In this document: in pieces, positions 420-50,856 of the stretch
Layout of the letters: each line of letters opens with the position of its first letter
How positions within the stretch are numbered: the first letter of the stretch is position 1
IMG/VR virus record: IMGVR_UViG_3300027782_000027
Span: 1 to 64,000 of that record
Direction: 5' to 3' (one strand)
DNA: 64,000 nucleotides
Notes under the pieces: model-generated
The model's input: only the letters and a program-made list of their open reading frames with translations
The model's database searches: none
Told to the model about the DNA's origin: nothing
Made by a program: the position numbers and the translations under genes

Positions 420-451
420 ACCCCATTGAATTCGCTACTCAGTGGGGTTTT
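420..451 (+). terminator. intrinsic terminator
   Basis: ACCCCATTGA...TCAGTGGGGT stem followed by T run, between convergent genes. Confidence 0.7.
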
Positions 452-1235
452 CATTTAAGACATCTTCTACCACTGGTGAATTACATGTACGCGATGTGTG
501 TGTTGTAGTTACCTTATGATTTAGGACTTCTCCCACCTCACTGGGAACAATAGTGGGTCTACAATTGGTTTTAGTTACCTTATGATTTAATACCTTCTCC
601 ACCATATTCGGAAACGGCGGTGTATTGAATGATATTGTAGATACCTTATGATTTAATACATCTTCCACCTTTATTTCCAACTGAAAACAAGAATGACCTG
701 TTGTAGATACCTTATGATTTAATACATCTTCTACCTTATGTCCAACCCATCCATCATACCCATCAGTTGTAGATACCTTATGATTTAATACATCTTCCAC
801 CAAGAAACCTTCGTTACCGATATCGTTTTGCGTTGTGGATACCTTATGATTTAATACCTCTTCCATCTTCACACTTGCCTTCATGCCCATGTAAACAGTT
901 GTAGATACCTTATGATTTAATACCTCTTCCACCCCGCCTGTAATCATGGTCTGCGCCATGGCAGTTGTGGACACCTTATGATTTAATACCTCTTCCACCC
1001 AAGAAGCAAGTATTGGTTCAAAATCTTTGGGTTCCAATGAGAAAATAGTAAAAAAACTATTAAAGAAATAATATCTCCACCACAAACGACCACTCTTTTC
1101 AAATTCAAAATACCAATGTTCCTTTTCTCGGTCAATTAACCATATAGAATCTTTATATGGGATTATCTCCGTATTACCTAATTCTTTGTATAGTTGTTTG
1201 AATACGACCTGTTTTAATCTATCAGTTACTTTCAT
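435..1235 (-). CDS. repeat-array protein 1: N-terminal domain of about 80 aa plus (VEEVLNHKVSTT + unique 10 aa) x8
   Basis: ORF translation; paralog of 1222-1899, 1883-2521 and 9657-10385. Confidence 0.85.
   Translation of the reverse strand: MKVTDRLKQVVFKQLYKELGNTEIIPYKDSIWLIDREKEHWYFEFEKSGRLWWRYYFFNSFFTIFSLEPKDFEPILASWVEEVLNHKVSTTAMAQTMITGGVEEVLNHKVSTTVYMGMKASVKMEEVLNHKVSTTQNDIGNEGFLVEDVLNHKVSTTDGYDGWVGHKVEDVLNHKVSTTGHSCFQLEIKVEDVLNHKVSTISFNTPPFPNMVEKVLNHKVTKTNCRPTIVPSEVGEVLNHKVTTTHTSRTCNSPVVEDVLNENPTE
502..999. CRISPR. CRISPR-like array 1, in frame inside a CDS; 8 full 36-nt repeats plus a degenerate one ending at 471; 30-nt spacers
   Basis: Consensus GTTGTRGATACCTTATGATTTAATACMTCTTCCACC at 502, 568, 634, 700, 766, 832, 898, 964; exact 66-nt period; no cas genes in the window. 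Confidence 0.55.
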
Positions 1236-1899
1236 TTTCTTTTTTGTTGTTTAATACCTCATCTACCGATTCCGCTCTTCTTGAGATGTATTCTTCCGTT
1301 TTGGATACCTTACGATTCAATATATCTTCCACCAAAAAGTTTCCTTCACCTACGTCACGGACTGTTTTGGATACCTTACGATTCAATACCTGTTCCACCG
1401 CAATGGTTACAGTTCCTGCCTTTCCTGCAGTTGTGGATACCTTACTATTCAATACCTCTTCCATCATATCATTCGAAGTGAAACTGAATTGCTGAGTTGT
1501 GGATACCTTACTATTCAATACCTCTTCCACCCCTTGCTTAAAACTTCTGAAACGGCTTGCAGTTGTGGATACCTTACTATTCAATACCTCTTCCACCCCG
1601 CCATCCATGACATATTGAGTGCTGTCAGTTGTGGATACCTTACTATTCAATACCTCTTCCACCCAAGATGAAATAATTGGTTCAAAATCTTTGGACTCCA
1701 AAGAGAAAAAAGAAAAGAAAGATTTGAAATAATCATATCTCCAATATAAACATCCACTTTCAGTTAGTTGGAAATACCAGTATTTTTCTTCTCTATCAAT
1801 AAACCAATAACTGTATTGGGTAGGGATAATTTCCACATTACCTAATTCTTTGTATAGTTGTTTGAATACAACCTGTTTTAATCTATCCGTTACTTTCAT
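1222..1899 (-). CDS. repeat-array protein 2 (6 unique 10-aa cassettes)
   Basis: ORF translation; repeats VEEVLNSKVSTT. Confidence 0.85.
   Translation of the reverse strand: MKVTDRLKQVVFKQLYKELGNVEIIPTQYSYWFIDREEKYWYFQLTESGCLYWRYDYFKSFFSFFSLESKDFEPIISSWVEEVLNSKVSTTDSTQYVMDGGVEEVLNSKVSTTASRFRSFKQGVEEVLNSKVSTTQQFSFTSNDMMEEVLNSKVSTTAGKAGTVTIAVEQVLNRKVSKTVRDVGEGNFLVEDILNRKVSKTEEYISRRAESVDEVLNNKKENESN
1298..1663. CRISPR. CRISPR-like array 2, in frame; 6 full repeats plus a degenerate one ending at 1267
   Basis: GTTGTGGATACCTTACTATTCAATACCTCTTCCACC-type repeats at 1298, 1364, 1430, 1496, 1562, 1628; 30-nt unique spacers. Confidence 0.55.
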
Positions 1900-2521
1900 T
1901 TTCTTTTTTATTGTTTAATGCCTTTTTCACCCAAGCACTATTTAATACTTCTTCCACTGACCTTTCGGAAAACAAGGAATTATTTTTAGTTGTTGATACC
2001 CTACTATCTAATACTTTTTTTACCTTTCTTTTTTGGGCGGCGTCTACTTCAAAAGTTTCGGATACCTTATGATTTAAGACCTCTTCCACCCACTTTGCTG
2101 TTACAGTAGTTTTCTCTTCAGTTGTGGATACCTTATGATTTAATACCTCTTCCACCAGAGGAAATTCGTCAATTACAAACATTTTTGTTGTGGATACCTT
2201 ATGATTTAATACCTCTTCCACCTTTCGCGAGAAGTAACCGAGCTTATTGCCTGTCGTGGATACCTTATGATTTAATACCTCTTCCACCCAAGAAGATATT
2301 ATTGGTTCAAACTCACTCTGTTCCAAAGAAAAAATGCTGAAAAACGATGGGAAGAATGAGTATCTCCAAAATAAACATCCATCTTTAGACAACTGAAAAT
2401 ACCAATAACAATTTTCCCTATCAATGAACCATACAGAGTCTTTATACGGGATTATCTCCACATTACCTAACTCTTTGTATAGGTGTTTGAATATGAGTTG
2501 TTTTAGCTTATCTGTAACCAT
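1883..2521 (-). CDS. repeat-array protein 3 (5 unique cassettes); start moved to ATG at 2521
   Basis: ORF translation; TATCTTTG element just upstream of the ATG; start matches paralogs. Confidence 0.85.
   Translation of the reverse strand: MVTDKLKQLIFKHLYKELGNVEIIPYKDSVWFIDRENCYWYFQLSKDGCLFWRYSFFPSFFSIFSLEQSEFEPIISSWVEEVLNHKVSTTGNKLGYFSRKVEEVLNHKVSTTKMFVIDEFPLVEEVLNHKVSTTEEKTTVTAKWVEEVLNHKVSETFEVDAAQKRKVKKVLDSRVSTTKNNSLFSERSVEEVLNSAWVKKALNNKKENESNG
1989..2288. CRISPR. CRISPR-like array 3, in frame; 5 repeats plus a degenerate one ending at 1958
   Basis: Repeats at 1989, 2055, 2121, 2187, 2253; 66-nt period. Confidence 0.55.
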
Positions 2522-2546
2522 AAGCACAAAGATAATAAAAAATTAC

Positions 2547-3086
2547 TTAATAAACAGGTCCTGATTTGAATTTTTTACATACAGGTATATTAGCTGTGGT
2601 TTTAAACTCTCTTGGAATTGCTTCACGTATTTTACCCCATTTATTATACGTATAAACATATTTGTCAATATCATTATATAAATCACCTTTAAATTTATAA
2701 TATGAGTTTACAAATTGACAAAAATCTTTGGCGGTTGAGATAGTTTTTATTGCTGGAGTTATTAAATCTTCTGAAGATGTTGTTTGAATATCTTTTTTTA
2801 CTTGATTTGCAGCATAATTTCCATCCCAAGCGTATGTGTCGGCTTTTGAATCATATCTACACCAATTAAATGAATTTACAACAATTTCATAGTCTTCAAA
2901 TCTTTCTTCACAAAGCCTAATACTTTCAGTCCCCGAATCAGGAAGGCTTGCTCCAAGTGATAATCCCATATCATTGAGACTCCCTATTAGGTTACCTGCT
3001 GGTACTCCCCCAATAGTTTGTTCTTTTATTACACGTTTTATTAAATTAATTAATTCAGATTCGGTTAGTCTAATTTTTTTACTCAT
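2547..3086 (-). CDS. hypothetical protein with KKIRLTESEL leader
   Basis: N-terminal leader shared with about 10 other ORFs. Confidence 0.75.
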   Translation of the reverse strand: MSKKIRLTESELINLIKRVIKEQTIGGVPAGNLIGSLNDMGLSLGASLPDSGTESIRLCEERFEDYEIVVNSFNWCRYDSKADTYAWDGNYAANQVKKDIQTTSSEDLITPAIKTISTAKDFCQFVNSYYKFKGDLYNDIDKYVYTYNKWGKIREAIPREFKTTANIPVCKKFKSGPVY

Positions 3087-3112
3087 TTTGTTTTTTTTAT
3101 ATAAATATATTA

Positions 3113-3451
3113 TTAATTTTCAGACGGTAATTTTAACGACCATTGGGAGCTCATTATCTTGTTGGACATTTGACCCTCCAAATTTAGTTTATTCTTAACC
3201 CATTGCCCAACAATTCTGGTGGATTGATAACTGTTAAGAGAAAAGAAGGAAGAAATGGCTTCAATTAAACCTTTATAGATAAAACACAATTCATTATTGG
3301 AATGATTACCACCATATTGAATTTGAGCTGACTCATCTTCAGGATATGAAAAATATATACTGGCACCAGTTTTAGTTATAATGAAATCCTGACTATCAAG
3401 ATACCTGAATATTACTTTATCTAATTGTGATTCTGTGATTAAATATTTCAT
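3113..3451 (-). CDS. MKYLITE-family small protein
   Basis: MKYLITESQLDKVIFRYLD...FFSL...WV paralog family. Confidence 0.8.
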   Translation of the reverse strand: MKYLITESQLDKVIFRYLDSQDFIITKTGASIYFSYPEDESAQIQYGGNHSNNELCFIYKGLIEAISSFFSLNSYQSTRIVGQWVKNKLNLEGQMSNKIMSSQWSLKLPSEN

Positions 3452-3819
3452 GATAATGTTATACTTCTAACTGATTTAACCTCATAGTCAGGAAAGAACT
3501 CATTAAATACATCTGACATAATGAATTTGCCGTGAACTAACCAAATGGGATGAGGAAACGCTGTACCATATATATCGTCAAAGTTCCTATTATAGTATAA
3601 ATCGCCACTTGGTTTATTATAAACCATTACAGCGTTTTGGTCACTATCAAATAAGTTAAGTCTTAAATCATTTTCATCATATGAATTAACCAAATTTGCA
3701 AAATAAGGAACCAATTTAGGTTTCAGTCTTTCGTATTGTTCCGTATATTCAGAATCTCTCCAAGTTCTTTCAAGTTCAGATATTAATTTATGTTGTGACT
3801 CGGTAATAATATACTTCAT
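3448..3819 (-). CDS. MKYIITE-leader small protein
   Basis: shared leader; upstream TATTTAT motif. Confidence 0.8.
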   Translation of the reverse strand: MKYIITESQHKLISELERTWRDSEYTEQYERLKPKLVPYFANLVNSYDENDLRLNLFDSDQNAVMVYNKPSGDLYYNRNFDDIYGTAFPHPIWLVHGKFIMSDVFNEFFPDYEVKSVRSITLS

Positions 3820-3851
3820 GTAATAATAAATATAATTATATTTATTATATT

Positions 3852-4175
3852 ATGAACCTACAAGAGAATATAAAAAAAGTATTAAGGGAAGAAACAGATT
3901 TTTCACCACAGTTCAAAAGAAGACTGAATAGATTTAAATCGTTTGTATGGGATAACAATGTAACTAATTATCCATGTGATTTTGAAAACTTTGAAGCGTT
4001 CATGCGTGGTATACAACATGAAATTATGGACATGATTACAGATGGTTCTGATACCGATGGTCCATTGTCTGAGTGGTTAAAATATAAAGATGGTGTTACG
4101 TATGTAGAAAACTACATGAGGGATGACTTAGAAAAGTTTTATAATAAAGAATGTGTTGATGTCTTATACGTATAA
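3852..4175 (+). CDS. MNLQENIKKVLREE-leader small protein
   Basis: leader shared with 5643 and 9201. Confidence 0.8.
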   Translation: MNLQENIKKVLREETDFSPQFKRRLNRFKSFVWDNNVTNYPCDFENFEAFMRGIQHEIMDMITDGSDTDGPLSEWLKYKDGVTYVENYMRDDLEKFYNKECVDVLYV

Positions 4176-4520
4176 ATCAAGAAATTGTTCCACTGTTATT
4201 CCAAGACCTGAGATACCAAATAAATTCATAAATTCAGATTCATCATATCTATCACATCCGTTATTGATAATCCAAGGAATATCTGTAACATAATTCATCT
4301 GATAAAGTATATCATAACTATTATCTAATTTTATAAGATACATCGGACCATAGTTATCCATACTAAGTCTTCTTCGTAAACCATCATCAGTAATACAGTT
4401 ATCAAAAGACATCATTACATCAATCAAATCTGGGTCAATCTCCACACGACCCGTAAGGTCAATATTAAATTTGTCTTTAATTAATGTTTTTAATTTTGAT
4501 TCAGTGATTAAGTATTTCAT
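4164..4520 (-). CDS. MKYLITE-leader small protein
   Basis: shared leader. Confidence 0.8.
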   Translation of the reverse strand: MKYLITESKLKTLIKDKFNIDLTGRVEIDPDLIDVMMSFDNCITDDGLRRRLSMDNYGPMYLIKLDNSYDILYQMNYVTDIPWIINNGCDRYDESEFMNLFGISGLGITVEQFLDLYV

Positions 4521-4536
4521 TATATATAAATATTAG

Positions 4537-4947
4537 TTAACAGTTACCTGTATTATAAACCTCAATATTGTGACCTCTAATTAGACCTCCACCGAACTGA
4601 TATAAAGCCTTAGCAATAGTATCTCTATACACACTCCTATTACCTTCTTCATACATATACCTCCCCACATTTTCAGGTTCCGGCTTAGGTATGTAGACAA
4701 CCAAATCCATAGAGTTACGAGTGGGGATGATATTATAACTACAATATCTTAAGACGGTTGAAATATCATTTTCAAATATAGTTTTTGTTAGAAAGATAAT
4801 ATCTTCTCTTTTTCCTTCAAGACCAATCTCATCAATAATATCTTCAGGTTCCTTATCAGTCATTTTACACAGAGTACGCATACCAAATTTCTCTAATAAG
4901 GGTTTAAGAGTTTTGCTATATTGATTCTCAGTGATTAAGTATTTCAT
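4537..4947 (-). CDS. MKYLITE-leader small protein
   Basis: shared leader. Confidence 0.8.
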   Translation of the reverse strand: MKYLITENQYSKTLKPLLEKFGMRTLCKMTDKEPEDIIDEIGLEGKREDIIFLTKTIFENDISTVLRYCSYNIIPTRNSMDLVVYIPKPEPENVGRYMYEEGNRSVYRDTIAKALYQFGGGLIRGHNIEVYNTGNC

Positions 4948-4955
4948 ATATTATA

Positions 4956-5285
4956 TTAGTTATTTACTCTTATCCATACATTCGGTGCGGGTTTAGCCCC
5001 ACGGACTTGTACAACTATTACTTTGAGGGTATTTTCAACCCATCTACGGATAAGTTCCATGGAATCGGAGATACCCAAAGAAAAGAAAGAGGCCACTTCA
5101 TTAATTAAACTATTAACAATGTAACACCAGCCACTAATTTTATCATATCTAATCTCAGCGTATTCATCATCTTCTAAATTAACTAAAAATATAGTTGCAC
5201 CCTTTTTAATCTGAATAAAGTTCTTAATATCCAAATATCTAAAGATTACTCTGTCTAATTGTGATTCGGTGATAAGGTATTTCAT
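4956..5285 (-). CDS. MKYLITE-family small protein
   Basis: close paralog of 8520-8816. Confidence 0.8.
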   Translation of the reverse strand: MKYLITESQLDRVIFRYLDIKNFIQIKKGATIFLVNLEDDEYAEIRYDKISGWCYIVNSLINEVASFFSLGISDSMELIRRWVENTLKVIVVQVRGAKPAPNVWIRVNN

Positions 5286-5288
5286 ATA

Positions 5289-5609
5289 TTAATATTCAAA
5301 AAACATAACATCAACATCAAATACTTTACTAAACCAATCAGAAATGAATTTACCTGATTGCTCTTTATCAAGTGGATACATGGATGAAAACTTATCTAAA
5401 AAAGATTCATCAATAAATAATCTACCATCACTATGGTCAAACTCCATTAAAATAAAAAAATCAGGGCCTCTTTCCTGGCTATATATATTAATGAAATCAC
5501 TATCTGATGTTCTATCATAATCTAATATATTATTTAACTCAGATATCATTAAATTATTTATTACCGATTTGGCTTTATCTAATTGTGATTCGGTGATAAG
5601 ATATTTCAT
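5289..5609 (-). CDS. MKYLITE-leader small protein (start moved to 5609)
   Basis: shared leader begins at codon 8 of the track ORF. Confidence 0.8.
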   Translation of the reverse strand: MKYLITESQLDKAKSVINNLMISELNNILDYDRTSDSDFINIYSQERGPDFFILMEFDHSDGRLFIDESFLDKFSSMYPLDKEQSGKFISDWFSKVFDVDVMFFEY

Positions 5610-5642
5610 ATAGAATATAAATATAATCATATTTATAATAAT

Positions 5643-5972
5643 ATGGACTTAAAAGAATCTATAAAAAGAATACTGAGGGAAGAACTATCGGCGAGAATTA
5701 AAAGAAGACTTTCTAATGATGAAATGGAAAATGAGTTTCTTGAATCTTTTGAAGGTGCTTATCGTCTTACAAAAGACAGAAAGGTTTTAAGTTCACATTT
5801 TTTAGATGAGTTAGTCTACACAACAATAACCTTTATGATGGATGGGGTACATTGGAGATTTGTTAGCACATTACCTGAAGATGAATTTTGGTATGATGAT
5901 ATACACCAAGGGTTAGAAAATCATTATAGAAAAAGAATTACACGGATGTATAATGAAAGAAAAGGTTTTTAA
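5643..5972 (+). CDS. MDLKESIKRILREE-leader small protein
   Basis: shared leader; similar to 3852-4175. Confidence 0.8.
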   Translation: MDLKESIKRILREELSARIKRRLSNDEMENEFLESFEGAYRLTKDRKVLSSHFLDELVYTTITFMMDGVHWRFVSTLPEDEFWYDDIHQGLENHYRKRITRMYNERKGF

Positions 5973-5975
5973 AGA

Positions 5976-6254
5976 TTAATTAGAGTTTAAGAATTTAAGT
6001 AACGCTCCAATATATTTGGAACGTTTATCATAGAATTCAGTATCATCATCATATTGAAAAAACTCTTCACCTCTATGTCTATCAATGAACTTTTCAATTA
6101 ATTCATAAGCGTAATCATCTCTGTCGGCGGAATCTTCAAAATCTTCTTCATCCATAATGTAGTTATAATCATCCCTAAGTGCTTCCAATTCATCCATTGT
6201 AAACCTCCTAAGTAAAAATACTTCTAACTGTGATTCTGTAATTAAGTATTTCAT
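5976..6254 (-). CDS. MKYLITE-leader acidic small protein
   Basis: shared leader. Confidence 0.8.
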   Translation of the reverse strand: MKYLITESQLEVFLLRRFTMDELEALRDDYNYIMDEEDFEDSADRDDYAYELIEKFIDRHRGEEFFQYDDDTEFYDKRSKYIGALLKFLNSN

Positions 6255-6267
6255 TATTCGTTAACCA

Positions 6268-6621
6268 TTAATCTGTAACTATTAATCTGTAATCATATGG
6301 ACCATCCCAAATCGTACTATTACTAATACCCAAAGTATTATTAACCCATTCTTTGATTATATCCAAACAATCCGATTTACCAATGGGTAATAAGGTAGAT
6401 AAATCCTCAGTCAAACTACGATTTACAAACACCCAATTCCTAACTTCACCAAAGGCGTTGTTAACATAAACACTAATCTGTGATTGACTATCTGACTCAC
6501 TGTTTAAGAAATATATATAATTGTTGAATCTCTTCTTGTTGTCATATATCACAAAGTCCTGAATATCAAGATACTTAAAGATTACTTTCTCTAATTTTGA
6601 TTCGGTGATAAGGTATTTCAT
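6268..6621 (-). CDS. MKYLITE-family small protein
   Basis: paralog family motif. Confidence 0.8.
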   Translation of the reverse strand: MKYLITESKLEKVIFKYLDIQDFVIYDNKKRFNNYIYFLNSESDSQSQISVYVNNAFGEVRNWVFVNRSLTEDLSTLLPIGKSDCLDIIKEWVNNTLGISNSTIWDGPYDYRLIVTD

Positions 6622-6633
6622 TATATATAAATA

Positions 6634-7002
6634 TTAGTTAAGGGGTATTCCCAATAACGAATGAATAAGGATGTCTTTGTTAGACGGTATTTTTAACCAA
6701 GACTGGGACATCAAAGTAGCCTTGGTGGTATTTGTAACCTTCATTTGTAGGGTATTCCCAACCCACCTACCAATAGCTGATTTAGAATCAGATTCGTCCA
6801 AAGAAAATAACGATGAGATGTTCTTGATTAATTCGGGACTTATTACACAACCAAAATTACCATTTTTGATTTGAGCATATTCATCATCTTCAGAGTTAAC
6901 GAAGTATACTAAAAGACCTATTTTAATTTGAATAAAATCTTGATGGTTCAAGTAAATAAAGATTGCTCTATCTAATTGTGATTCTGTAATTAAGTATTTC
7001 AT
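6634..7002 (-). CDS. MKYLITE-family small protein (start moved to 7002)
   Basis: leader begins at codon 15 of the track ORF. Confidence 0.8.
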   Translation of the reverse strand: MKYLITESQLDRAIFIYLNHQDFIQIKIGLLVYFVNSEDDEYAQIKNGNFGCVISPELIKNISSLFSLDESDSKSAIGRWVGNTLQMKVTNTTKATLMSQSWLKIPSNKDILIHSLLGIPLN

Positions 7003-7109
7003 TATATATAAATACAAAGATACACATAAAACTGAACAATACATATTGGGTTAATAATTTAATAAGAATAAGATAATATGGTTTGAGGTCGTTTTTAATA
7101 CTTATTATT

Positions 7110-7817
7110 ATGGATTTATCAAAGTTTTTAACCATAGTAATCCCTTGTAAGAACGAGGGCAAGATAATTGAACAAACGTTGTCCTTATTAAACTTTCAAA
7201 AGGGAATACAAGATGTTAGAGTTATTGTTTGTGATTCATCGGATGATGATTATACATCCTATTCTTTGGAAAATAGGAGAACAGATTATTTTAATCTACA
7301 GATTATTTCAGGAGGACTTCCGTCTGTTGCAAGAAATAAGGGAGCAGAGAATGTGGAAACACCTTATGTTCTATTTTTGGATGCTGACATATTCTTATTG
7401 GATTTTGACATATTAAACAATTGTATATGGGAGTTCTTATTACATAATACAGATTTGATTACATGTAAGGTAAGGTCAACGACAGGTGAGTATAATAGTA
7501 TATTCAGATTGTTTGACACCATACAAAAGGTATTTAAACCAATCACGCCATTTTGTCTTGGTGGGTTTATGATGGTTAAGAAAGAAGTATATGATACAAT
7601 CGGCGGGTTTGATGAAAACGCAAGAGTTGCTGAGGATTATCTATTCTCCAAACAAGTTAAACCAAGTAAGTTTTATATCATGAATACAACAGTATTCACA
7701 AGTCCAAGAAGGTTCAAACAGAAAGGTGTGTGGTATATGTTAAAACTTATGGTTAGTTCATTCTTCAACAGGAACAATAAAAATCATTTTGAGGATGATA
7801 AAGGATACTGGGAATGA
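7110..7817 (+). CDS. glycosyltransferase family 2
   Basis: IVIPCKNE, ARNKGA, LFLDAD (DxD) and GGFDE...ED motifs. Confidence 0.9.
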   Translation: MDLSKFLTIVIPCKNEGKIIEQTLSLLNFQKGIQDVRVIVCDSSDDDYTSYSLENRRTDYFNLQIISGGLPSVARNKGAENVETPYVLFLDADIFLLDFDILNNCIWEFLLHNTDLITCKVRSTTGEYNSIFRLFDTIQKVFKPITPFCLGGFMMVKKEVYDTIGGFDENARVAEDYLFSKQVKPSKFYIMNTTVFTSPRRFKQKGVWYMLKLMVSSFFNRNNKNHFEDDKGYWE

Positions 7818-8527
7818 ATAATTGGAAAACGATAATCATGAGTGACTTACACTTAGGAGCGAGACAATCACAGACAGATAAGATAATAAGTTTCTTGGAT
7901 AATAACACAACGGAAAAACTAATACTGAACGGTGATATAATAGATGGTTGGGCTCTCAAAGGTAATGGTAAATGGACAAAGGATTGTACCAAGATATTCA
8001 GGAAGTTCATGAAGATGTCCGAGAAGAATACAAAGGTAATTTATATAAGAGGAAACCATGATGACTTCTTAAAAGATTTTATTCCATTTAAATTAAACAA
8101 CATCAGGATTGTAAGGAAGTATGTTCATACAGGGATAGATAATAGAAAGTATTTTTGTTTTCACGGAGATGTATTGGATTTTGTTATAATGGAAGCAAGA
8201 TGGCTTGCAGTAATCGGTGGATGGTCATATGATATTGTCATTAAGTTTAATACTCTATATAACAAAATAAGAAAGTGGTTTAACTTACCATATCATTCAT
8301 TAGCTAACACAATAAAACAATCTGTAAAAGGGGCGATTAACTTTGTATCTGATTTTGAGGATAACGCGAAAGGTTTAACAAAACAAAAGGGATATGATGT
8401 TGCGGTGTGTGGACATATTCATCACCCGAAGATAGAGAATGACTATATGAACTCAGGAGACTTTTGTGAGAACTCTACATGTCTTGTAGAAGATTACAAT
8501 GGGGTGTGGAAAATAATTACTATCTAA
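7814..8527 (+). CDS. UDP-2,3-diacylglucosamine hydrolase-like (LpxH family) metallophosphoesterase
   Basis: SDLHLG, GDIID, GNHD, HGD, GHIH, NSGDF calcineurin-like motifs; translationally coupled to the GT2 gene. Confidence 0.85.
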   Translation: MNNWKTIIMSDLHLGARQSQTDKIISFLDNNTTEKLILNGDIIDGWALKGNGKWTKDCTKIFRKFMKMSEKNTKVIYIRGNHDDFLKDFIPFKLNNIRIVRKYVHTGIDNRKYFCFHGDVLDFVIMEARWLAVIGGWSYDIVIKFNTLYNKIRKWFNLPYHSLANTIKQSVKGAINFVSDFEDNAKGLTKQKGYDVAVCGHIHHPKIENDYMNSGDFCENSTCLVEDYNGVWKIITI

Positions 8528-8816
8528 CTATAACTTCTTTAACTCTTCTATCCAAAGTATTCTCAACCCATCTAGCAATAACATATTTAGAATTATCAAA
8601 TTCTATAGAGAAGAAATCTTTAATCTCATCAATTAACCCAAAAATTATTACACACTCACCACCTCTAAAGTATTCGATTGATGAGTCGATATATTCACCA
8701 CCTTCAGAATTGGCGAAGTAAATTGCACTCCCTCTTTTAATCTGAATAAAGTTCTTAATATCCAAATATCTAAAGATTACTCTATCTAATTGTGATTCTG
8801 TTATAAGGTATTTCAT
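8520..8816 (-). CDS. MKYLITE-family small protein
   Basis: paralog family motif. Confidence 0.8.
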   Translation of the reverse strand: MKYLITESQLDRVIFRYLDIKNFIQIKRGSAIYFANSEGGEYIDSSIEYFRGGECVIIFGLIDEIKDFFSIEFDNSKYVIARWVENTLDRRVKEVIVR

Positions 8817-8832
8817 TATATATAAATATTAG

Positions 8833-9168
8833 TTAGAAGGGTAACCTCAATGTCAAACTTCCACTGTTTGTAATGGACATTGATTTTTCGTAACTGTATT
8901 TTACTTGTAATGTATCACCAATCCATCGAACAATAATCTTCTCAGAATCAGAATCACTCAAAGAAAATAATGATGAAATATCGTCAACTAATTCATAATT
9001 CATAAAAGAAAAATTATCACTCATATCGTATCTGATTTGACAATACTTATCACCTTCTGAATTAACAAAGTATATAGTGTCTTTATCCTCAACCTGAATA
9101 AAATCTTGATTGTCAAGATACCTAAAGATTACTTTTTCTAATTTAGATTCTGTGATAAGATATTTCAT
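8833..9168 (-). CDS. MKYLITE-family small protein
   Basis: paralog family motif. Confidence 0.8.
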   Translation of the reverse strand: MKYLITESKLEKVIFRYLDNQDFIQVEDKDTIYFVNSEGDKYCQIRYDMSDNFSFMNYELVDDISSLFSLSDSDSEKIIVRWIGDTLQVKYSYEKSMSITNSGSLTLRLPF

Positions 9169-9200
9169 ATGATAATAAATATAATTATATTTATAATATT

Positions 9201-9656
9201 ATGAACCTACAACAAAACATAAAAAGAATATTAAGGGAAGAATACACCGTAAAACAGATGAAGTTATTAACTATCGCAAGTCAGGTGGGGTTACTAAAGA
9301 CAGGAGAAATGTTCGGTGGTATAGAATACCTTATAAATGTGTTAGGTGATGAGTTCCTTACAACAAACAATAAGGTTAAGATTATTAGGGAAGTAGTAGA
9401 AACAACCGATTATGAATATATCACACTAATGGATATGAATGAAAACCCAATAGTTCTCAAGGTTGGAGACGGTAAACTTTCACAAATAGAAATGATAAAT
9501 AAAGAAGATGTTACAGTGTTCCATTATGGTGGATATGAATACTCACAAGATTTAGGTGAAAGTTATATATCTTATGAAGAACTACCAAAAGATGTATTAG
9601 ATGATATCTTTAATATGGTATTAGATTTCTATACAGATACTTTAGAGAATAAGTAA
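9201..9656 (+). CDS. MNLQQNIKRILREE-leader protein
   Basis: shared leader. Confidence 0.8.
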   Translation: MNLQQNIKRILREEYTVKQMKLLTIASQVGLLKTGEMFGGIEYLINVLGDEFLTTNNKVKIIREVVETTDYEYITLMDMNENPIVLKVGDGKLSQIEMINKEDVTVFHYGGYEYSQDLGESYISYEELPKDVLDDIFNMVLDFYTDTLENK

Positions 9657-10385
9657 TTATTGATTTAAGACCTGTTCCATCACATAATTCATTACAGACA
9701 TTTCTACATCCGTTGTACATACCTTATTATTTAATACCTCTTCCACTCCTCTTGTGAAAGGTCCAGAATATGCTTCCATTGTAGATACCTTATGATTTAA
9801 TACCTCTTCTACCTCAATTCTTCCAACGTAATCAAGTGAATCGGTTGTGGATACCTTATGATTTAAGACCTCTTCCACCAATGAATGTTCGGGGTATTTG
9901 AGAATGGTAGTTGTAGACACCTTAACATTATGACTTAATACATCTTCCACCTTCCAAGGAACACGAACTTTAACATCGCACGTTGTGGATACCTTATGAT
10001 TTAATACATCTTCCACCATCATGCTTTCAACACCGCTACCTGTCACGGTTGTGGATACCTTATGATTTAAGACCTCTTCCACCACGTAGTTCCTAAGCCC
10101 TATAGGGCGATATGTTGCGGATACCTTATGATTTAAGACCTCTTCCACCCAAGAAGATAGAACAGGACAAAAATCATCCGAACTCATGGAGAATATTTGA
10201 AAAAACGAATTAAAAAAATCGTATCTCCACCATAAAGTACCTGACTCATCAAGTTCAAAGTACCAATGTTTATTATCCCTATTAATGAACCATATAGACC
10301 CATTATAAGGAATAATCTCACAATCACCTAACTCTCTATATAGGTGTTTAAAAATAATTTGTTTTAATCTATCTGTAATAACCAT
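9657..10385 (-). CDS. repeat-array protein 4 (7 unique cassettes)
   Basis: paralog of 435-1235; TATATTTG element just upstream of the ATG. Confidence 0.85.
   Translation of the reverse strand: MVITDRLKQIIFKHLYRELGDCEIIPYNGSIWFINRDNKHWYFELDESGTLWWRYDFFNSFFQIFSMSSDDFCPVLSSWVEEVLNHKVSATYRPIGLRNYVVEEVLNHKVSTTVTGSGVESMMVEDVLNHKVSTTCDVKVRVPWKVEDVLSHNVKVSTTTILKYPEHSLVEEVLNHKVSTTDSLDYVGRIEVEEVLNHKVSTMEAYSGPFTRGVEEVLNNKVCTTDVEMSVMNYVMEQVLNQ
9712..10149. CRISPR. CRISPR-like array 4, in frame; 7 repeats (one with a 6-nt insertion) plus a degenerate one ending at 9681
   Basis: Repeats at 9712, 9778, 9844, 9910 (42 nt), 9982, 10048, 10114; all spacers 30 nt. Confidence 0.55.
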
Positions 10386-28907: not shown

Positions 28908-30695
28908 ATGAGGAATTTATTGACTGAAGTTAGTAAGATGAAAAACATGATGGGTTTACAAGAGGCAGATAAGCCAAAATATAACCCTGAAGTAAAATAT
29001 CTTGTTTCAGTTTTAAAAGATAATAAAGTGTATAGTGCTCAAATCCAAAAATTCATTAATAGGATTAATGAATTTTCAAAAGACGGTTTAGTTGATTTTG
29101 GATTAATTACCCGAGGTATTTTAAAAACTTTAAAGTTAAAAGGTAACAAAGATATTAATGTTTTTGAATTTTTCAAACAACTAACTAAATCATTAGAAAA
29201 AAGAAAAAATAAAAAAGAAGTTGTTAATCCTGAAGAAGAACCATCAATTTTAGATAAAGACATTTATAAAAAAGAAATATTTTTTCTACAGGTTGAACTT
29301 TTAAAGTTACAGGAATGGTTAAAACAAACAGGTAAAACTGTTATAATTGTTTTTGAAGGAAGAGACTCGGCAGGTAAAGGTTCTACAATTAAGAAATTCA
29401 CTGAAAATTTAAATCCAAGATATTATAAAGTTATTGCTCTTGGTATCCCAACACCTGATGAAAGAAAGAACTGGTGGGATAGATACAGTAATCAAATTGA
29501 AAAAGGTAAGATAAACTTCTTTGATAGAAGTTGGTACAATAGAGGATTAGTTGAACCTGTAATGGGTTATGGTTCATCAGAAGAGTACGAAGACTTTATG
29601 GATAATGTTCAGGATTTTGAAGAATCATTGGTTGTTGATGGGGATTACTTATTTAAACTTTGGTTCTCAATAGATAAAGAAACTCAAGCTAAGAGATTTG
29701 ATTTCAGACAGAAGTCACCATTGAAATATTGGAAGTATTCTGAGAATGATGAGAAGATGCAAGATGTGTGGGAAAAGTTTACAGAGTATAAACAAAAACT
29801 TTTTGATAAAACATCAACCGTAAACCATCCGTGGGTTATTTTGGACGCTAACGATAAAAAGATTTCAGGTTTAAACTCAATTAGATACGTTTTACAAAAT
29901 ATTCCTTATACAAATAAGGATGAGGATGTTTTAAACAAAGACTTCCCTGAAGCGATGACGGTTTTAAAACCAAATATTAATGAGCAATCAGTTTTTGATT
30001 TCTATAACCAATTAACGGGTAAATCACAACAAAAACAAGAACCAAATTTTATGGATACATGGTCATCTATGGGACAACCAAAAGACCAAATGACACCAAA
30101 TTCAGGAGGTGCTGTTGATGCAGTTAAAGCTGGTGCTAAAAAAATTGCAAAAATTGCAAAAGAAAAGTCATCAAATTCAAATACAGTTGGGGTCGGAACA
30201 GTTTCAGATAAACTTGTAAATTTTGTAGCGAATATTGAGTTTTTTGTTAAGTGTGTTTATGACGACGCTAAAGGTGGTAAATGTGTGAGAAAAGAACCTG
30301 ATTGTTGTTTAAGAGGAAAATCCCCAACTCCCGGAGCAAAGGCAACAATAGGTTATGGTACAACGTATTATCCTGGTGGAATACCTGTTAAACCTAATGA
30401 CCCTGACATTACTGAAACAAGAGCAAAAGAATTAATGAGAAATACATTAAACAAAAATGCAAAAAAAATACTTAATTTATACCCAAACTTAAATCAACAA
30501 CAATTAGATGCGATGGCTTCATTATGTTACCAAATGGGACCTGATGGTTGTACAACAGAAGCTCCAAATTTATCAGCAGCCTTAAAAAGTAATCCAAATA
30601 ATTTACAAAATGTTGGACAACATTTTGTTGATTTCCCATTCAAAGACAGAAGAGAAAAAGAGTGGAAAATTTATAGTCAAGGAATTTATTCTTAA
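28908..30695 (+). CDS. ppk2: polyphosphate kinase 2 fused to a C-terminal GH24 lysozyme-like domain
   Basis: FEGRDSAGKG and FDRSWYNR (PPK2); E...VYDD, TIGYG, LNQQQLDAMASL.Y..G, RR.KE (phage lysozyme). Confidence 0.85.
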   Translation: MRNLLTEVSKMKNMMGLQEADKPKYNPEVKYLVSVLKDNKVYSAQIQKFINRINEFSKDGLVDFGLITRGILKTLKLKGNKDINVFEFFKQLTKSLEKRKNKKEVVNPEEEPSILDKDIYKKEIFFLQVELLKLQEWLKQTGKTVIIVFEGRDSAGKGSTIKKFTENLNPRYYKVIALGIPTPDERKNWWDRYSNQIEKGKINFFDRSWYNRGLVEPVMGYGSSEEYEDFMDNVQDFEESLVVDGDYLFKLWFSIDKETQAKRFDFRQKSPLKYWKYSENDEKMQDVWEKFTEYKQKLFDKTSTVNHPWVILDANDKKISGLNSIRYVLQNIPYTNKDEDVLNKDFPEAMTVLKPNINEQSVFDFYNQLTGKSQQKQEPNFMDTWSSMGQPKDQMTPNSGGAVDAVKAGAKKIAKIAKEKSSNSNTVGVGTVSDKLVNFVANIEFFVKCVYDDAKGGKCVRKEPDCCLRGKSPTPGAKATIGYGTTYYPGGIPVKPNDPDITETRAKELMRNTLNKNAKKILNLYPNLNQQQLDAMASLCYQMGPDGCTTEAPNLSAALKSNPNNLQNVGQHFVDFPFKDRREKEWKIYSQGIYS

Positions 30696-47204: not shown

Positions 47205-47278
47205 GCCTTCGTAGCTCAGTAGGATAGAGCAACAGATTTCTAATCTGTGGGCCAGGGGTTCGAATCCCTTCGGGGGTA
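47205..47278 (+). tRNA. tRNA-Arg (anticodon TCT)
   Basis: GCCTTCG acceptor, TAGCTCAG..GGATAGAGC D arm, ACAGA-TTTCTAA-TCTGT anticodon arm, GGTTCGAATCC T arm; CCA not encoded; promoter and terminator flank it. Confidence 0.93.
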
Positions 47279-47284
47279 CTATTT

Positions 47285-50463: not shown

Positions 50464-50856
50464 TGGTGGAGGTGCTGGGTTTCGAACCCAGGTCCAAAAA
50501 TGTTTACGATAAAACACTACACGTTTAGGTCATTGTTTTTCTAAACAATCCGAAACTTCACAATTCCCTTATTTTATAGTGGTTCGGTTTACTGAGAACT
50601 AATCCTCCACTTTGTTCCTTTTCGGATAGAAACCACACCACGGTACGAGCTTCTGTTTCAAGGCGTATGCTTACCGGCCCATTGTATACTAATCTTAGAT
50701 TAGGCTACAGATACTTCTTCAGTACGGATTAAACCGAGTGTAGAAAGTTTTGCAATTGTGTTGCCGTTTGTTTTTTAAACCAGTTTTACAGGGTTAGTTT
50801 AGCCCCGACGTGCGTTTTATAATAAATTCATTCCTGTCAAATCCAGAAACACCCCC
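50464..50856 (-). ncRNA. ssrA: tmRNA
   Basis: 5' GGGGGTGTTTCTGGATTTGACAGG; 3' CTGGGTTCGAAACCCAGCACCTCCACCA; tag ORF 50765-50700; TATCTTTG promoter upstream. Confidence 0.92.

What the first reader, a model, noticed from the sequence alone, without database searches (positions are those of the whole stretch)
471..10149. Repeat boundaries ignore codon phase, so the unit is conserved at nucleotide level
Seen: on the coding strand the repeat is GGTGGAAGAGGTATTAAATCATAAGGTATCCACAAC. Its first G is the wobble base of the last, otherwise variable, spacer codon, and it is G in 24 of 26 junctions (GGG, AAG, TTG, ATG, GAG, GTG, GCG, TCG, CTG, TGG). The two exceptions are in 3'-terminal, decayed repeats. 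This genome strongly prefers A/T at third positions. At the other end the repeat stops after AC of a Thr codon whose third base takes all four values. Protein-level selection alone cannot explain this, whereas a precise 36-bp duplication on insertion can.
Basis: seen in the sequence. Interest (0 to 1): 0.85.

Follow-up and report, generated by a model that had tools for sequence, protein, structure and literature searches.

The report
In-frame CRISPR-like cassette arrays in phage genes
Four genes of an uncultured freshwater jumbo phage are built like CRISPR arrays (a 36-base repeat alternating with unrelated 30-base inserts) yet are kept open and translated, which suggests a previously undescribed way of writing new 10-residue peptides into a protein.

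Summary
Four paralogous minus-strand genes (435-1235, 1222-1899, 1883-2527, 9657-10385) each encode a ~79-aa domain followed by 5-8 units of 66 nt. Each unit is a near-identical 36-nt repeat plus an unrelated 30-nt cassette.

- **Boundaries:** conservation drops from 0.9-2.0 bits to 0.24 bits or less exactly at the 36-nt edges, out of codon phase. The wobble G is present in 89/95 junctions against 8.5% genome G3 (p=3e-87), and in 468/495 in a larger set.
- **Translation:** the arrays have 0-3 in-frame stops in 495 cassettes, and cassette peptides are under purifying selection.
- **Cassettes:** they are mutually unrelated, and their amino-acid make-up is close to that of random codons.
- **Dynamics:** arrays differ between near-identical phages by whole units. 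Novelty concentrates next to the N-terminal domain, and repeats decay towards the 3' end.
- **Not found:** no cas gene, reverse transcriptase, protospacer or known family.

Best reading (about 0.45): units are added beside the domain by a repeat-duplicating insertion like CRISPR adaptation, shuffled by recombination in the repeats, and filtered for an open frame. The main rival (about 0.3) is an old repeat protein whose repeat halves are homogenised by homology-limited gene conversion. The protein's function is unknown.

The parts
435..1235 (-). Gene A (266 aa). N-terminal domain at 1000-1235. Array at 436-999: 8 repeat+cassette units and a truncated terminal repeat (471-436).
   Evidence: no Pfam, NCBIfam or PHROG family
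1222..1899 (-). Gene B (225 aa). Domain at 1664-1899, array at 1268-1663 (6 units), then a truncated terminal repeat. Its own repeat variant (Ser AGT in place of His CAT, TTG in place of TTA) is identical in the four units nearest the domain. The start of gene A overlaps the end of gene B.
1883..2527 (-). Gene C (214 aa). Domain at 2289-2527, array at 1959-2288 (5 units), then a decayed terminal repeat. The start of gene B overlaps the end of gene C.
9657..10385 (-). Gene D (242 aa). Domain at 10150-10385, array at 9660-10149 (7 units). One unit is 72 nt because its repeat carries a 6-nt in-frame insertion, which is inherited together with its cassette in all D orthologues.
964..999 (-). Example of the first ('master') repeat. 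It is the last 36 nt of the domain's coding sequence. Its first base is the third base of the invariant Trp codon, and it ends after AC of a Thr codon.
   Evidence: hhalign aligns the domain, through WVEEVLNHKV, with the array-less paralogues (95.9%, E 5e-9)
3113..9168 (-). Cluster of at least six array-less paralogues of the same domain (3113-3451, 4956-5285, 6268-6621, 6634-7044, 8520-8816, 8833-9168; MKYLITESQL...WVxNTL plus a tail), lying between genes C and D among other small genes on both strands. They serve as an internal control: their tails diverge by ordinary point changes between related phages.

Best explanation
**What it is (shown).** The window is the first 64 kb of a 240,759-bp contig of an uncultured freshwater jumbo phage. 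Four paralogous genes each encode a small alpha/beta domain followed by 22-aa modules: 12 constant residues (VEEVLNHKVSTT) plus 10 variable ones. At DNA level each module is a 36-nt repeat, which is a copy of the last 36 nt of the domain's own coding sequence, plus a 30-nt cassette. The frame is kept open through all units, and each cassette, once present, evolves under purifying selection as a peptide.

**How it works (inferred).** New units are added as whole 66-nt pieces immediately after the domain. The first repeat is duplicated and an unrelated 30-nt stretch is placed between the two copies. This is the same topology as CRISPR spacer integration, and because 66 is 3 x 22 it preserves the frame. 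The enzyme is unknown. It is either a host Cas1-Cas2 of the 36/30 type acting in trans, or an undescribed activity. Recombination between repeats then deletes and shuffles units. Selection removes insertions that carry stops or have lengths that are not multiples of three.

**Product.** The result is a protein whose C-terminal part is a string of near-random 10-residue peptides on a constant scaffold. It most likely acts as a variable recognition or decoy surface in phage-host or phage-phage conflict.
For: - **Sharp, phase-blind boundaries:**
- **Strict period:** 1113 of 1154 adjacent repeat pairs (gaps of 60-80 nt) are 66 nt apart. Nearly all others are multiples of three. No metagenome record has a 67-nt or 65-nt spacing for the exact repeat half.
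- **Translated:** 0 stops in 1155 in-frame codons against 3-9.5% in the other five frames, P about 1e-30. In the larger set, 3 stops in 5445 codons, all at array 3' ends.
- **Cassettes are unrelated.** Pairwise Hamming distances are bimodal, either 7 or fewer (orthologous copies) or 11 or more. The upper mode peaks at 22, like the simulated random distribution. There are 405 clusters, 344 of them singletons, and no long shared k-mers. Amino-acid make-up is close to that of random codons, with modest departures.
- **Purifying selection on cassettes:** variable columns at codon positions 3:1:2 are 85:35:31 (p=6e-9), with 74 synonymous against 61 non-synonymous codon changes.
- **Whole-unit turnover is faster than point change.** Gene D in the window and in L005 have identical 231-nt domain sequence, but 3 of the window's 7 cassettes and 4 of L005's 8 have no counterpart in the other. 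The same polymorphism appears in independent lake metagenomes.
- **Polarity:** 4 of 34 array pairs share the first cassette and 19 of 34 share the last. Mismatches to the first repeat rise 0, 1.1, 2.0, 3.2, 4.7, 4.7, 5.0 with unit index. Repeat variants lie in ordered blocks (NRK in older units, NSK in newer ones in gene B).
- **Each lineage's repeats copy that lineage's own domain end**.
- **Control:** array-less paralogues in the same island show no tail replacement.
Against: - No integrase was identified. There is no Cas1 in this genome (82% complete) or in two relatives rated 100% complete (326 kb and 309 kb). There is no Cas13b and no reverse transcriptase.
- No cassette source was found in the phage's own genome, in 50,697 phage records, in IMG/VR for two cassettes, or in about 1,100 Bacteroidota genomes.
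- Cassette GC content is under-dispersed (variance 0.78 of binomial). This fits poorly with capture from many different genomes.
- Some cassettes occur in several contexts (cassette 8 precedes 9, 78 or 55). Recombination is therefore certainly at work and could by itself mimic polarity.
- Polarity and repeat decay could also reflect the long homology and stronger constraint at the domain end.
Confidence: 0.45

Rival explanations
1. This is an old repeat protein, for example a beta-solenoid with one variable face, and nothing is inserted. The 36-nt halves are kept alike by gene conversion or unequal exchange that can only run through the homologous stretch. That alone makes the boundaries sharp and blind to codon phase. 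Cassettes diverged long ago, and today's differences come from deletion and from exchange with a very large population pool.
For: Hybrid repeats and cassettes found in several contexts prove recombination within repeats. Repeats are homogeneous within an array and lineage-specific (L077: seven leader-proximal repeats near-identical, all sharing GTA GAA in place of GTG GAG), which is the signature of concerted evolution. The family is old: 499 clusters at 50% identity, with domain identity down to about 42%. AlphaFold places two short strands per unit, though at pLDDT about 50. Weak position preferences (Gly at cassette position 5, Pro at 6) fit a folded loop.
Against: No cassette pairs lie between 8 and 10 mismatches among 122,000 pairs, so duplication followed by divergence is not feeding the pool. 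No tandem duplicate of a cassette was seen in about 40 arrays, although unequal exchange should make as many duplicates as deletions. Rare G-ending codons are retained in 11 lineages against a strong A/T bias. Cassette GC3 is 38% against 20% for the genome and shows no drift with unit age.
Confidence: 0.3
2. The arrays act at RNA level, as guide RNAs or as decoys for a host CRISPR effector of the 36/30 type (type II or VI-B). Translation is secondary, for instance protecting a long transcript from Rho-dependent termination.
For: The geometry is 36 nt plus 30 nt. The repeat read in the coding sense shares 22-24 of 36 positions in register, including up to the last 12 nt, with the Cas13b-associated repeat of Flavobacterium columnare and F. 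covae. There is a 5-bp terminal inverted repeat. Phage repeat mimics that act on Cas proteins are described (bioRxiv 10.1101/2024.10.29.618823, abstract seen).
Against: The 12-nt identity is specific to one phage lineage; others have a different 3' half. Shuffled versions of the Flavobacterium repeat reach 22-24 of 36 somewhere in this genome. The inner stem of the VI-B repeat is absent. There is no Rfam match and no protospacer. Substitutions in cassettes are concentrated at third codon positions, which an RNA guide would not show. The repeat derives from the coding sequence of a protein domain.
Confidence: 0.1
3. The genes are multi-core peptide precursors, processed by a protease or RiPP-like enzymes. 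The domain serves as a leader and the 12 constant residues as recognition sites, releasing many different 10-22-residue peptides.
For: Every cassette is flanked on both sides by constant sequence, because a truncated repeat is kept after the last cassette. Cassettes are hypervariable while the flanks are identical at nucleotide level, as known for cyanobactin precursors (own knowledge: Donia et al. 2006). Cassette peptides are under purifying selection.
Against: No protease or modifying enzyme was seen among the neighbours scanned. Only a GT2 glycosyltransferase and a metallophosphoesterase were recognised. The Foldseek match to a RiPP recognition element is not significant (E 1.9). Near-random peptides are an odd product set. 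This reading concerns function and does not explain how cassettes arise.
Confidence: 0.1
4. The pattern is an assembly artefact or a spurious ORF laid over an ordinary non-coding CRISPR array.
For: CRISPR arrays are sometimes wrongly translated into database proteins with spaced repeats (PMC7673337, abstract seen).
Against: The same architecture occurs in more than 150 independent contigs from many lakes and in independent runs. The absence of stops has P about 1e-30. Substitutions carry a coding signature. The N-terminal domain is in frame and homologous to a protein family.
Confidence: 0.02

Closest known systems
CRISPR arrays with 36-nt repeats and about 30-nt spacers (type II; type VI-B of Flavobacterium, L020 and L021)
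   Same: Near-identical direct repeats alternate with unique inserts of fixed length. Boundaries are defined at nucleotide level. Growth is polar and the far-end repeats decay. Whole units are gained and lost between near-identical genomes. Geometry is 36+30.
   Different: These arrays lie inside an ORF and are translated, and the inserts are under purifying selection as peptides. No cas genes are present, no protospacers were found, and there is no non-coding leader, since the 'leader' is a protein domain. Spacing is strictly 66, whereas the Flavobacterium arrays show 65-67.
Neo-CRISPR or ectopic spacer integration by Cas1-Cas2 at repeat-like sites (own knowledge: Nivala et al. 2018; ectopic acquisition within arrays: PMC7999890, abstract seen)
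   Same: A pre-existing sequence is duplicated around an inserted spacer. This could seed an array at the 3' end of a gene.
   Different: Those events are sporadic, occur in the host chromosome and are not coding. Here the architecture is maintained in a whole phage gene family (499 clusters at 50% identity).
Diversity-generating retroelements (e.g. PMC6199706, abstract seen)
   Same: They are phage-borne and make a defined part of a protein hypervariable.
   Different: DGRs need a reverse transcriptase and a template repeat, and change only adenine-templated positions in place. There is no RT here and no template copy, and the variation comes in whole units.
Multi-core RiPP precursors with hypervariable cassettes (cyanobactin patE type; own knowledge)
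   Same: Variable short peptides sit between constant flanks that are identical at nucleotide level.
   Different: No processing enzymes were found here. There are many more cassettes with near-random composition, and the arrays show CRISPR-like polarity and unit turnover.
Cassette-based variable receptors and antigenic variation (lamprey VLR, Borrelia vlsE, Neisseria pilE/pilS; own knowledge)
   Same: A modular variable protein is assembled from short cassettes by recombination at short conserved stretches.
   Different: Those systems draw on silent donor cassettes in the same genome. None exist here.

Membership tests
CRISPR array | Near-identical direct repeats of 23-55 nt separated by unique spacers of similar length | tested here: met
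   36-nt repeats and 30-nt unrelated cassettes
CRISPR array | Non-coding; transcribed and processed into crRNA | tested here: not met
   The frame is open through 495 cassettes, and substitutions show a coding pattern. RNA processing could not be tested, because only assembled contigs of RNA runs were available.
CRISPR array | Associated cas genes (adaptation module or effector) in the locus or genome | tested here: not met
   No Cas1 or Cas13b in this genome or in two complete relatives. The largest ORFs are structural or replicative. A host-encoded system cannot be excluded.
CRISPR array | Spacers match foreign DNA (protospacers) | tested here: inconclusive
   None found, but only a small part of sequence space was searched. 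One out-of-register 26-nt match to a bacterial rpmF gene remains unexplained.
CRISPR array | Polar growth at one end, with a degenerate terminal repeat | tested here: met
   Pairs sharing the first cassette 4/34, the last 19/34. Repeat decay rises with unit index.
Type VI-B (Cas13b) direct repeat | 36-nt repeat with paired GTTG...CAAC termini and an inner stem, conserved in the family | tested here: not met
   Termini are similar only in this lineage. The inner stem is absent, and other phage lineages differ in the 3' half.
Diversity-generating retroelement | Reverse transcriptase plus a template repeat; adenine-specific changes | tested here: not met
   No RT. No second copy of any cassette outside the arrays.
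Ordinary tandem-repeat protein under concerted evolution | The whole repeat unit is homogenised; units related to each other by descent | tested here: not met
   Only 36 of the 66 nt are homogenised. Cassettes are at random-level distance, with none at intermediate distance.
Multi-core RiPP or peptide precursor | Neighbouring maturation enzymes (protease, cyclodehydratase, radical SAM and the like) | tested here: inconclusive
   None among the neighbours scanned. The rest of the genome was not fully annotated.

The most novel reading that the evidence does not exclude
This phage family carries a natural in-frame 'cassette writer'. An integrase-type activity, either host Cas1-Cas2 co-opted in trans or an unknown enzyme, inserts arbitrary 30-nt DNA next to a protein domain while duplicating a 36-nt repeat. 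A gene thereby accumulates a heritable, selectable library of random 10-residue peptides. This would be CRISPR-like memory or diversification acting at protein rather than RNA level.
Probability: 0.35. Interest if true: 0.95.

Novelty: categorically new. Interest (0 to 1): 0.85.

Why it matters
If units really are inserted, this would be a third way, beside DGRs and recombination of silent cassettes, by which a virus diversifies a protein. It would also be the first in which CRISPR-type array growth is read out as protein. That would bear on how CRISPR arrays and their integration chemistry can be co-opted, and on how random peptides become functional. It could also offer a template for in vivo peptide-library writing. 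Even under the rival reading, it is a widespread, uncharacterised hypervariable gene family of abundant lake phages, with an unusually clean separation of DNA-level and protein-level constraints. The questions are testable with existing lake time series and with cloned genes.

Tried and rejected
- **Family and fold searches.** Pfam, NCBIfam, PHROGs and Rfam gave nothing for the array genes or the small paralogues.
- **Structure.** AlphaFold gave a usable model only for the domain (pLDDT 70-87); the repeat region had pLDDT about 50. Foldseek against PDB and BFVD found only family members. The ESM Atlas gave nothing.
- **Isolated phages.** None carries the family.
- **Cassette source.** Searches of the phage's own genome, all fetched loci, two 22-mers in IMG/VR, 401 Flavobacterium genomes, 401 Bacteroidota genomes and 301 genomes of one order found no source.
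- **Mimicry of the Flavobacterium Cas13b repeat.** I followed this lead and then downgraded it. Shuffled repeats score as well genome-wide, and the shared 3' end is lineage-specific.
- **Stop-codon filtering as the cause of the narrow GC spread.** Simulated and rejected.
- **Promoter and terminator scan.** No better than shuffles.
- **Literature.** Six searches, including the repeat and peptide strings themselves, found no description.
- **Read laying.** Only assembler contigs were available, so transcript ends could not be read.


Full report
**Context.** The window is the first 64 kb of a single 240,759-bp viral contig. It is about 31% GC and carries a T4-type large terminase, a ClpB-like ATPase, a PPK2-lysozyme fusion, a tRNA and a tmRNA. 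The nearest terminases, at 27-29% identity, belong to uncultured huge phages and to Flavobacterium phages. CheckV rates the genome 82% complete. Near-identical DNA is present in many lake-water metagenomes.

**Anatomy.** There are four minus-strand genes: A 435-1235, B 1222-1899, C 1883-2527 and D 9657-10385.
- Each begins with a ~79-aa domain that is 62-69% identical between paralogues.
- Each then runs through 5-8 units of exactly 66 nt.
- A unit is a 36-nt repeat, read as G + 11 codons + AC and encoding VEEVLNHKVSTT, followed by 30 unrelated bases.
- The repeat occurs nowhere else in the 240 kb.
- C, B and A are tandem with overlapping stop and start codons.
- Between C and D lie at least six small genes (MKYLITESQL...WVxNTL plus a tail). 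A profile comparison shows these to be array-less homologues of the domain (95.9%, E 5e-9), and the alignment runs through WVEEVLNHKV.

The repeat is therefore the domain's own last 36 coding bases. Its first G is the third base of the invariant Trp codon.

**Check of the observation.**
- On 78 non-redundant units, information content is 0.86-2.0 bits at all 36 repeat positions and 0.24 bits or less at all 30 cassette positions, changing within one base at each edge.
- The wobble G is 89/95 against a genomic G3 of 8.5% (p=3e-87).
- It is 468/495 in the enlarged set.
- Its protein shadow is that residues lacking an NNG codon are nearly absent, and Met is unusually common (10-12%), at cassette position 10. 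This holds in 282 cassettes from 120 metagenomic homologues and in 225 cassettes from representatives of clusters at 50% identity.
- The repeat uses codons that are rare in this genome (GTG 8.9%, GAG 19.8%, AAG 22.4%, TCC 3.7%).
- GTG-GAA-GAG is invariant in 11 lineages whose domains are less than 75% identical. Identical-codon use at conserved residues is 75% in the first repeat against 56% in the domain.

**The arrays are translated.**
- 105 unique cassettes have no stop in 1155 in-frame codons, against 3.0-9.5% per codon in the other five frames. The chance expectation is about 1e-30.
- In 495 cassettes only three carry a stop, all at the 3' end of an array.
- Spacing is 66 in 1113 of 1154 adjacent repeat pairs with gaps of 60-80 nt. 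Almost all others are 63, 69, 72 or 75.
- The only 67-nt cases are one terminal 'cassette' that consists of a stop codon and a terminator-like hairpin.
- A scan of 241 million metagenome records found no pair of exact repeat halves 67 nt apart. Among at least 120 loci, none was 65 nt apart.
- Among orthologous copies of a cassette, variable columns fall 85:35:31 on codon positions 3:1:2 (p=6e-9). Codon changes are 74 synonymous to 61 non-synonymous, so the peptides are under purifying selection.
- Weak position preferences (Gly at position 5, Pro at 6) point the same way.
- Contigs from RNA libraries cover parts of genes A-C, which is weak evidence of transcription.

**The cassettes are unrelated to each other and to anything found.**
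- Pairwise distances among 495 cassettes are bimodal. 140 pairs have 7 or fewer mismatches. The rest have 11 or more, peak at 22 like the simulated random distribution, and none lies at 8-10. This gives 405 clusters, 344 of them singletons.
- Shared k-mers in any register or orientation barely exceed shuffles.
- Composition is 41.5% GC against 32% for the genome. It is flat across codon positions, with GC3 of 38% against 20%, and shows no gradient along the array. It is less variable than binomial (ratio 0.78), which stop-codon avoidance does not explain.
- No source was found in any search.
- One exception remains unexplained. A 26-nt exact run (35/38 overall) matches the antisense of the rpmF gene of one Bacteroidota genome. 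It covers 20 nt of gene A's oldest cassette and 18 nt of the adjoining repeat, so it is out of register with the cassette.

**Dynamics.**
- Orthologous arrays in related phages keep the cassette order but differ by whole units.
- Gene D of the window and of L005 have identical 231-nt domain sequence, yet 3 of the window's 7 cassettes and 4 of L005's 8 have no counterpart in the other.
- Of 34 pairs of distinct orthologous arrays, 4 share the first cassette and 19 share the last.
- Mismatches to the first repeat rise 0, 1.1, 2.0, 3.2, 4.7, 4.7, 5.0 with unit index.
- Repeat variants lie in ordered blocks, for example NRK in older units and NSK in newer ones in gene B.
- Hybrid repeats mark deletions by recombination within repeats.
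- Some cassettes appear in several contexts or in different paralogues, so recombination is certainly active.
- In distant family members (domain identity down to about 42%) the architecture is the same, and each array repeats that lineage's own domain end.
- The array-less paralogues in the same island diverge in the ordinary way, tail included.

**What was not found.** There is no Cas1, Cas13b or reverse transcriptase, here or in two complete relatives for Cas1 and Cas13b. There is no Rfam family, no protein family and no fold match. No isolated phage carries the gene, and six literature searches found no description.

**Interpretation.** These things are shown:
- a translated, hypervariable, modular protein family;
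- module boundaries set at DNA level;
- variable parts that are independent sequences, gained and lost as units, with novelty concentrated next to the domain.

The most economical mechanism is addition of units beside the domain with duplication of the first repeat. This is the topology of CRISPR spacer integration, and it is frame-preserving because 36+30 = 66. Recombination and selection for an open frame would follow. This step is inferred, and neither the enzyme nor the source of the 30 nt is known.

The strongest rival needs no insertion. Gene conversion confined to the homologous 36 nt also gives sharp, phase-blind edges, and exchange through the long domain homology could mimic polarity. 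It does not explain three things: the absence of intermediate cassette similarity, the lack of duplicated cassettes, and the retention of rare G-ending codons.

I pursued an RNA-level reading, with the arrays as guides or decoys for a host 36/30 CRISPR system. The repeat matches the Cas13b-associated repeat of Flavobacterium columnare and F. covae at 22-24 of 36 positions in register, including up to the last 12. That identity is lineage-specific and is within the range reached by shuffled repeats genome-wide. It also lacks the inner stem, and the coding pattern of substitutions argues against it.

A peptide-precursor reading concerns function only and lacks any enzyme partner. An artefact is excluded by more than 150 independent contigs.

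**Function.** The protein's function is unknown. My best guess is a variable binding or decoy surface on a constant scaffold. This rests only on the purifying selection on individual cassettes, the rapid unit turnover and the location in an island of fast-evolving paralogues.

**Verdict.** The structure belongs to no known family and resembles CRISPR arrays in architecture and dynamics while failing their defining tests.

Noticed in passing
window 454-491: A 26-nt exact run (35/38 overall) matches the antisense of the ribosomal protein L32 gene (rpmF, flanked by plsX and a DUF177 gene) of one Bacteroidota genome. It spans the junction of gene A's oldest cassette and the terminal repeat. It is either chance or a trace of captured host DNA.
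   Followed up: partly
window 964-999 and all repeats; L020:637-1400, L021:4745-5560: The repeat, read in the coding sense, shares 22-24 of 36 positions in register with the Cas13b-associated CRISPR repeat of Flavobacterium columnare and F. covae, including up to the last 12 nt in copies that carry TCT. The 3' identity is specific to this phage lineage and is probably coincidental.
   Followed up: yes
window 2547-9656: An island of small paralogous genes on both strands. At least six are MKYLITESQL-type domain paralogues, and several further small genes share only that N-terminus. A second family on the plus strand starts M(N/D)L(Q/K)E.IK..LREE (3852-4175, 5643-5972, 9201-9656). Neither has any known family. 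A GT2 glycosyltransferase (7083-7817) and a metallophosphoesterase (7814-8527) sit in the middle.
   Followed up: partly
L107, L147, L163, L173 (array 3' ends): In one lineage the last 'cassette' is 31 nt long and consists of a stop codon plus a terminator-like hairpin. It is still followed by a decayed repeat, so the repeat-cassette structure runs past the end of the ORF.
   Followed up: partly
L077:492-690: A TAG stop is formed by a cassette ending in TA plus the constant G of the next repeat. One intact unit and a decayed repeat lie beyond the stop.
   Followed up: yes
window 1883-1899 and 1222-1235: Genes C, B and A overlap head to tail: the ATG of the next gene lies inside the ...NKKENESN tail of the previous one. 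This suggests tandem duplication of the whole gene and translational coupling.
   Followed up: no
window 964-999 (any repeat): The 36-nt repeat contains an internal imperfect direct repeat, (G/A)AGGTAT, at positions 8-15 and 23-30, and a 5-bp terminal inverted repeat, GTGGA/TCCAC.
   Followed up: no
window 50464-50856 and 47205-47279: The phage encodes a tmRNA (tag AKLSTLGLIRTEEVSVA) and a tRNA-Arg(TCT).
   Followed up: no
window 28908-30695: One 595-aa ORF joins a polyphosphate kinase 2 domain and a phage lysozyme domain.
   Followed up: no
own genome 168785-183085 (outside the window): A 4766-aa ORF contains a short motif recurring many times, mostly at distances that are multiples of 9 nt. 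It was seen through repeated 12-15-nt chance hits of one cassette.
   Followed up: no
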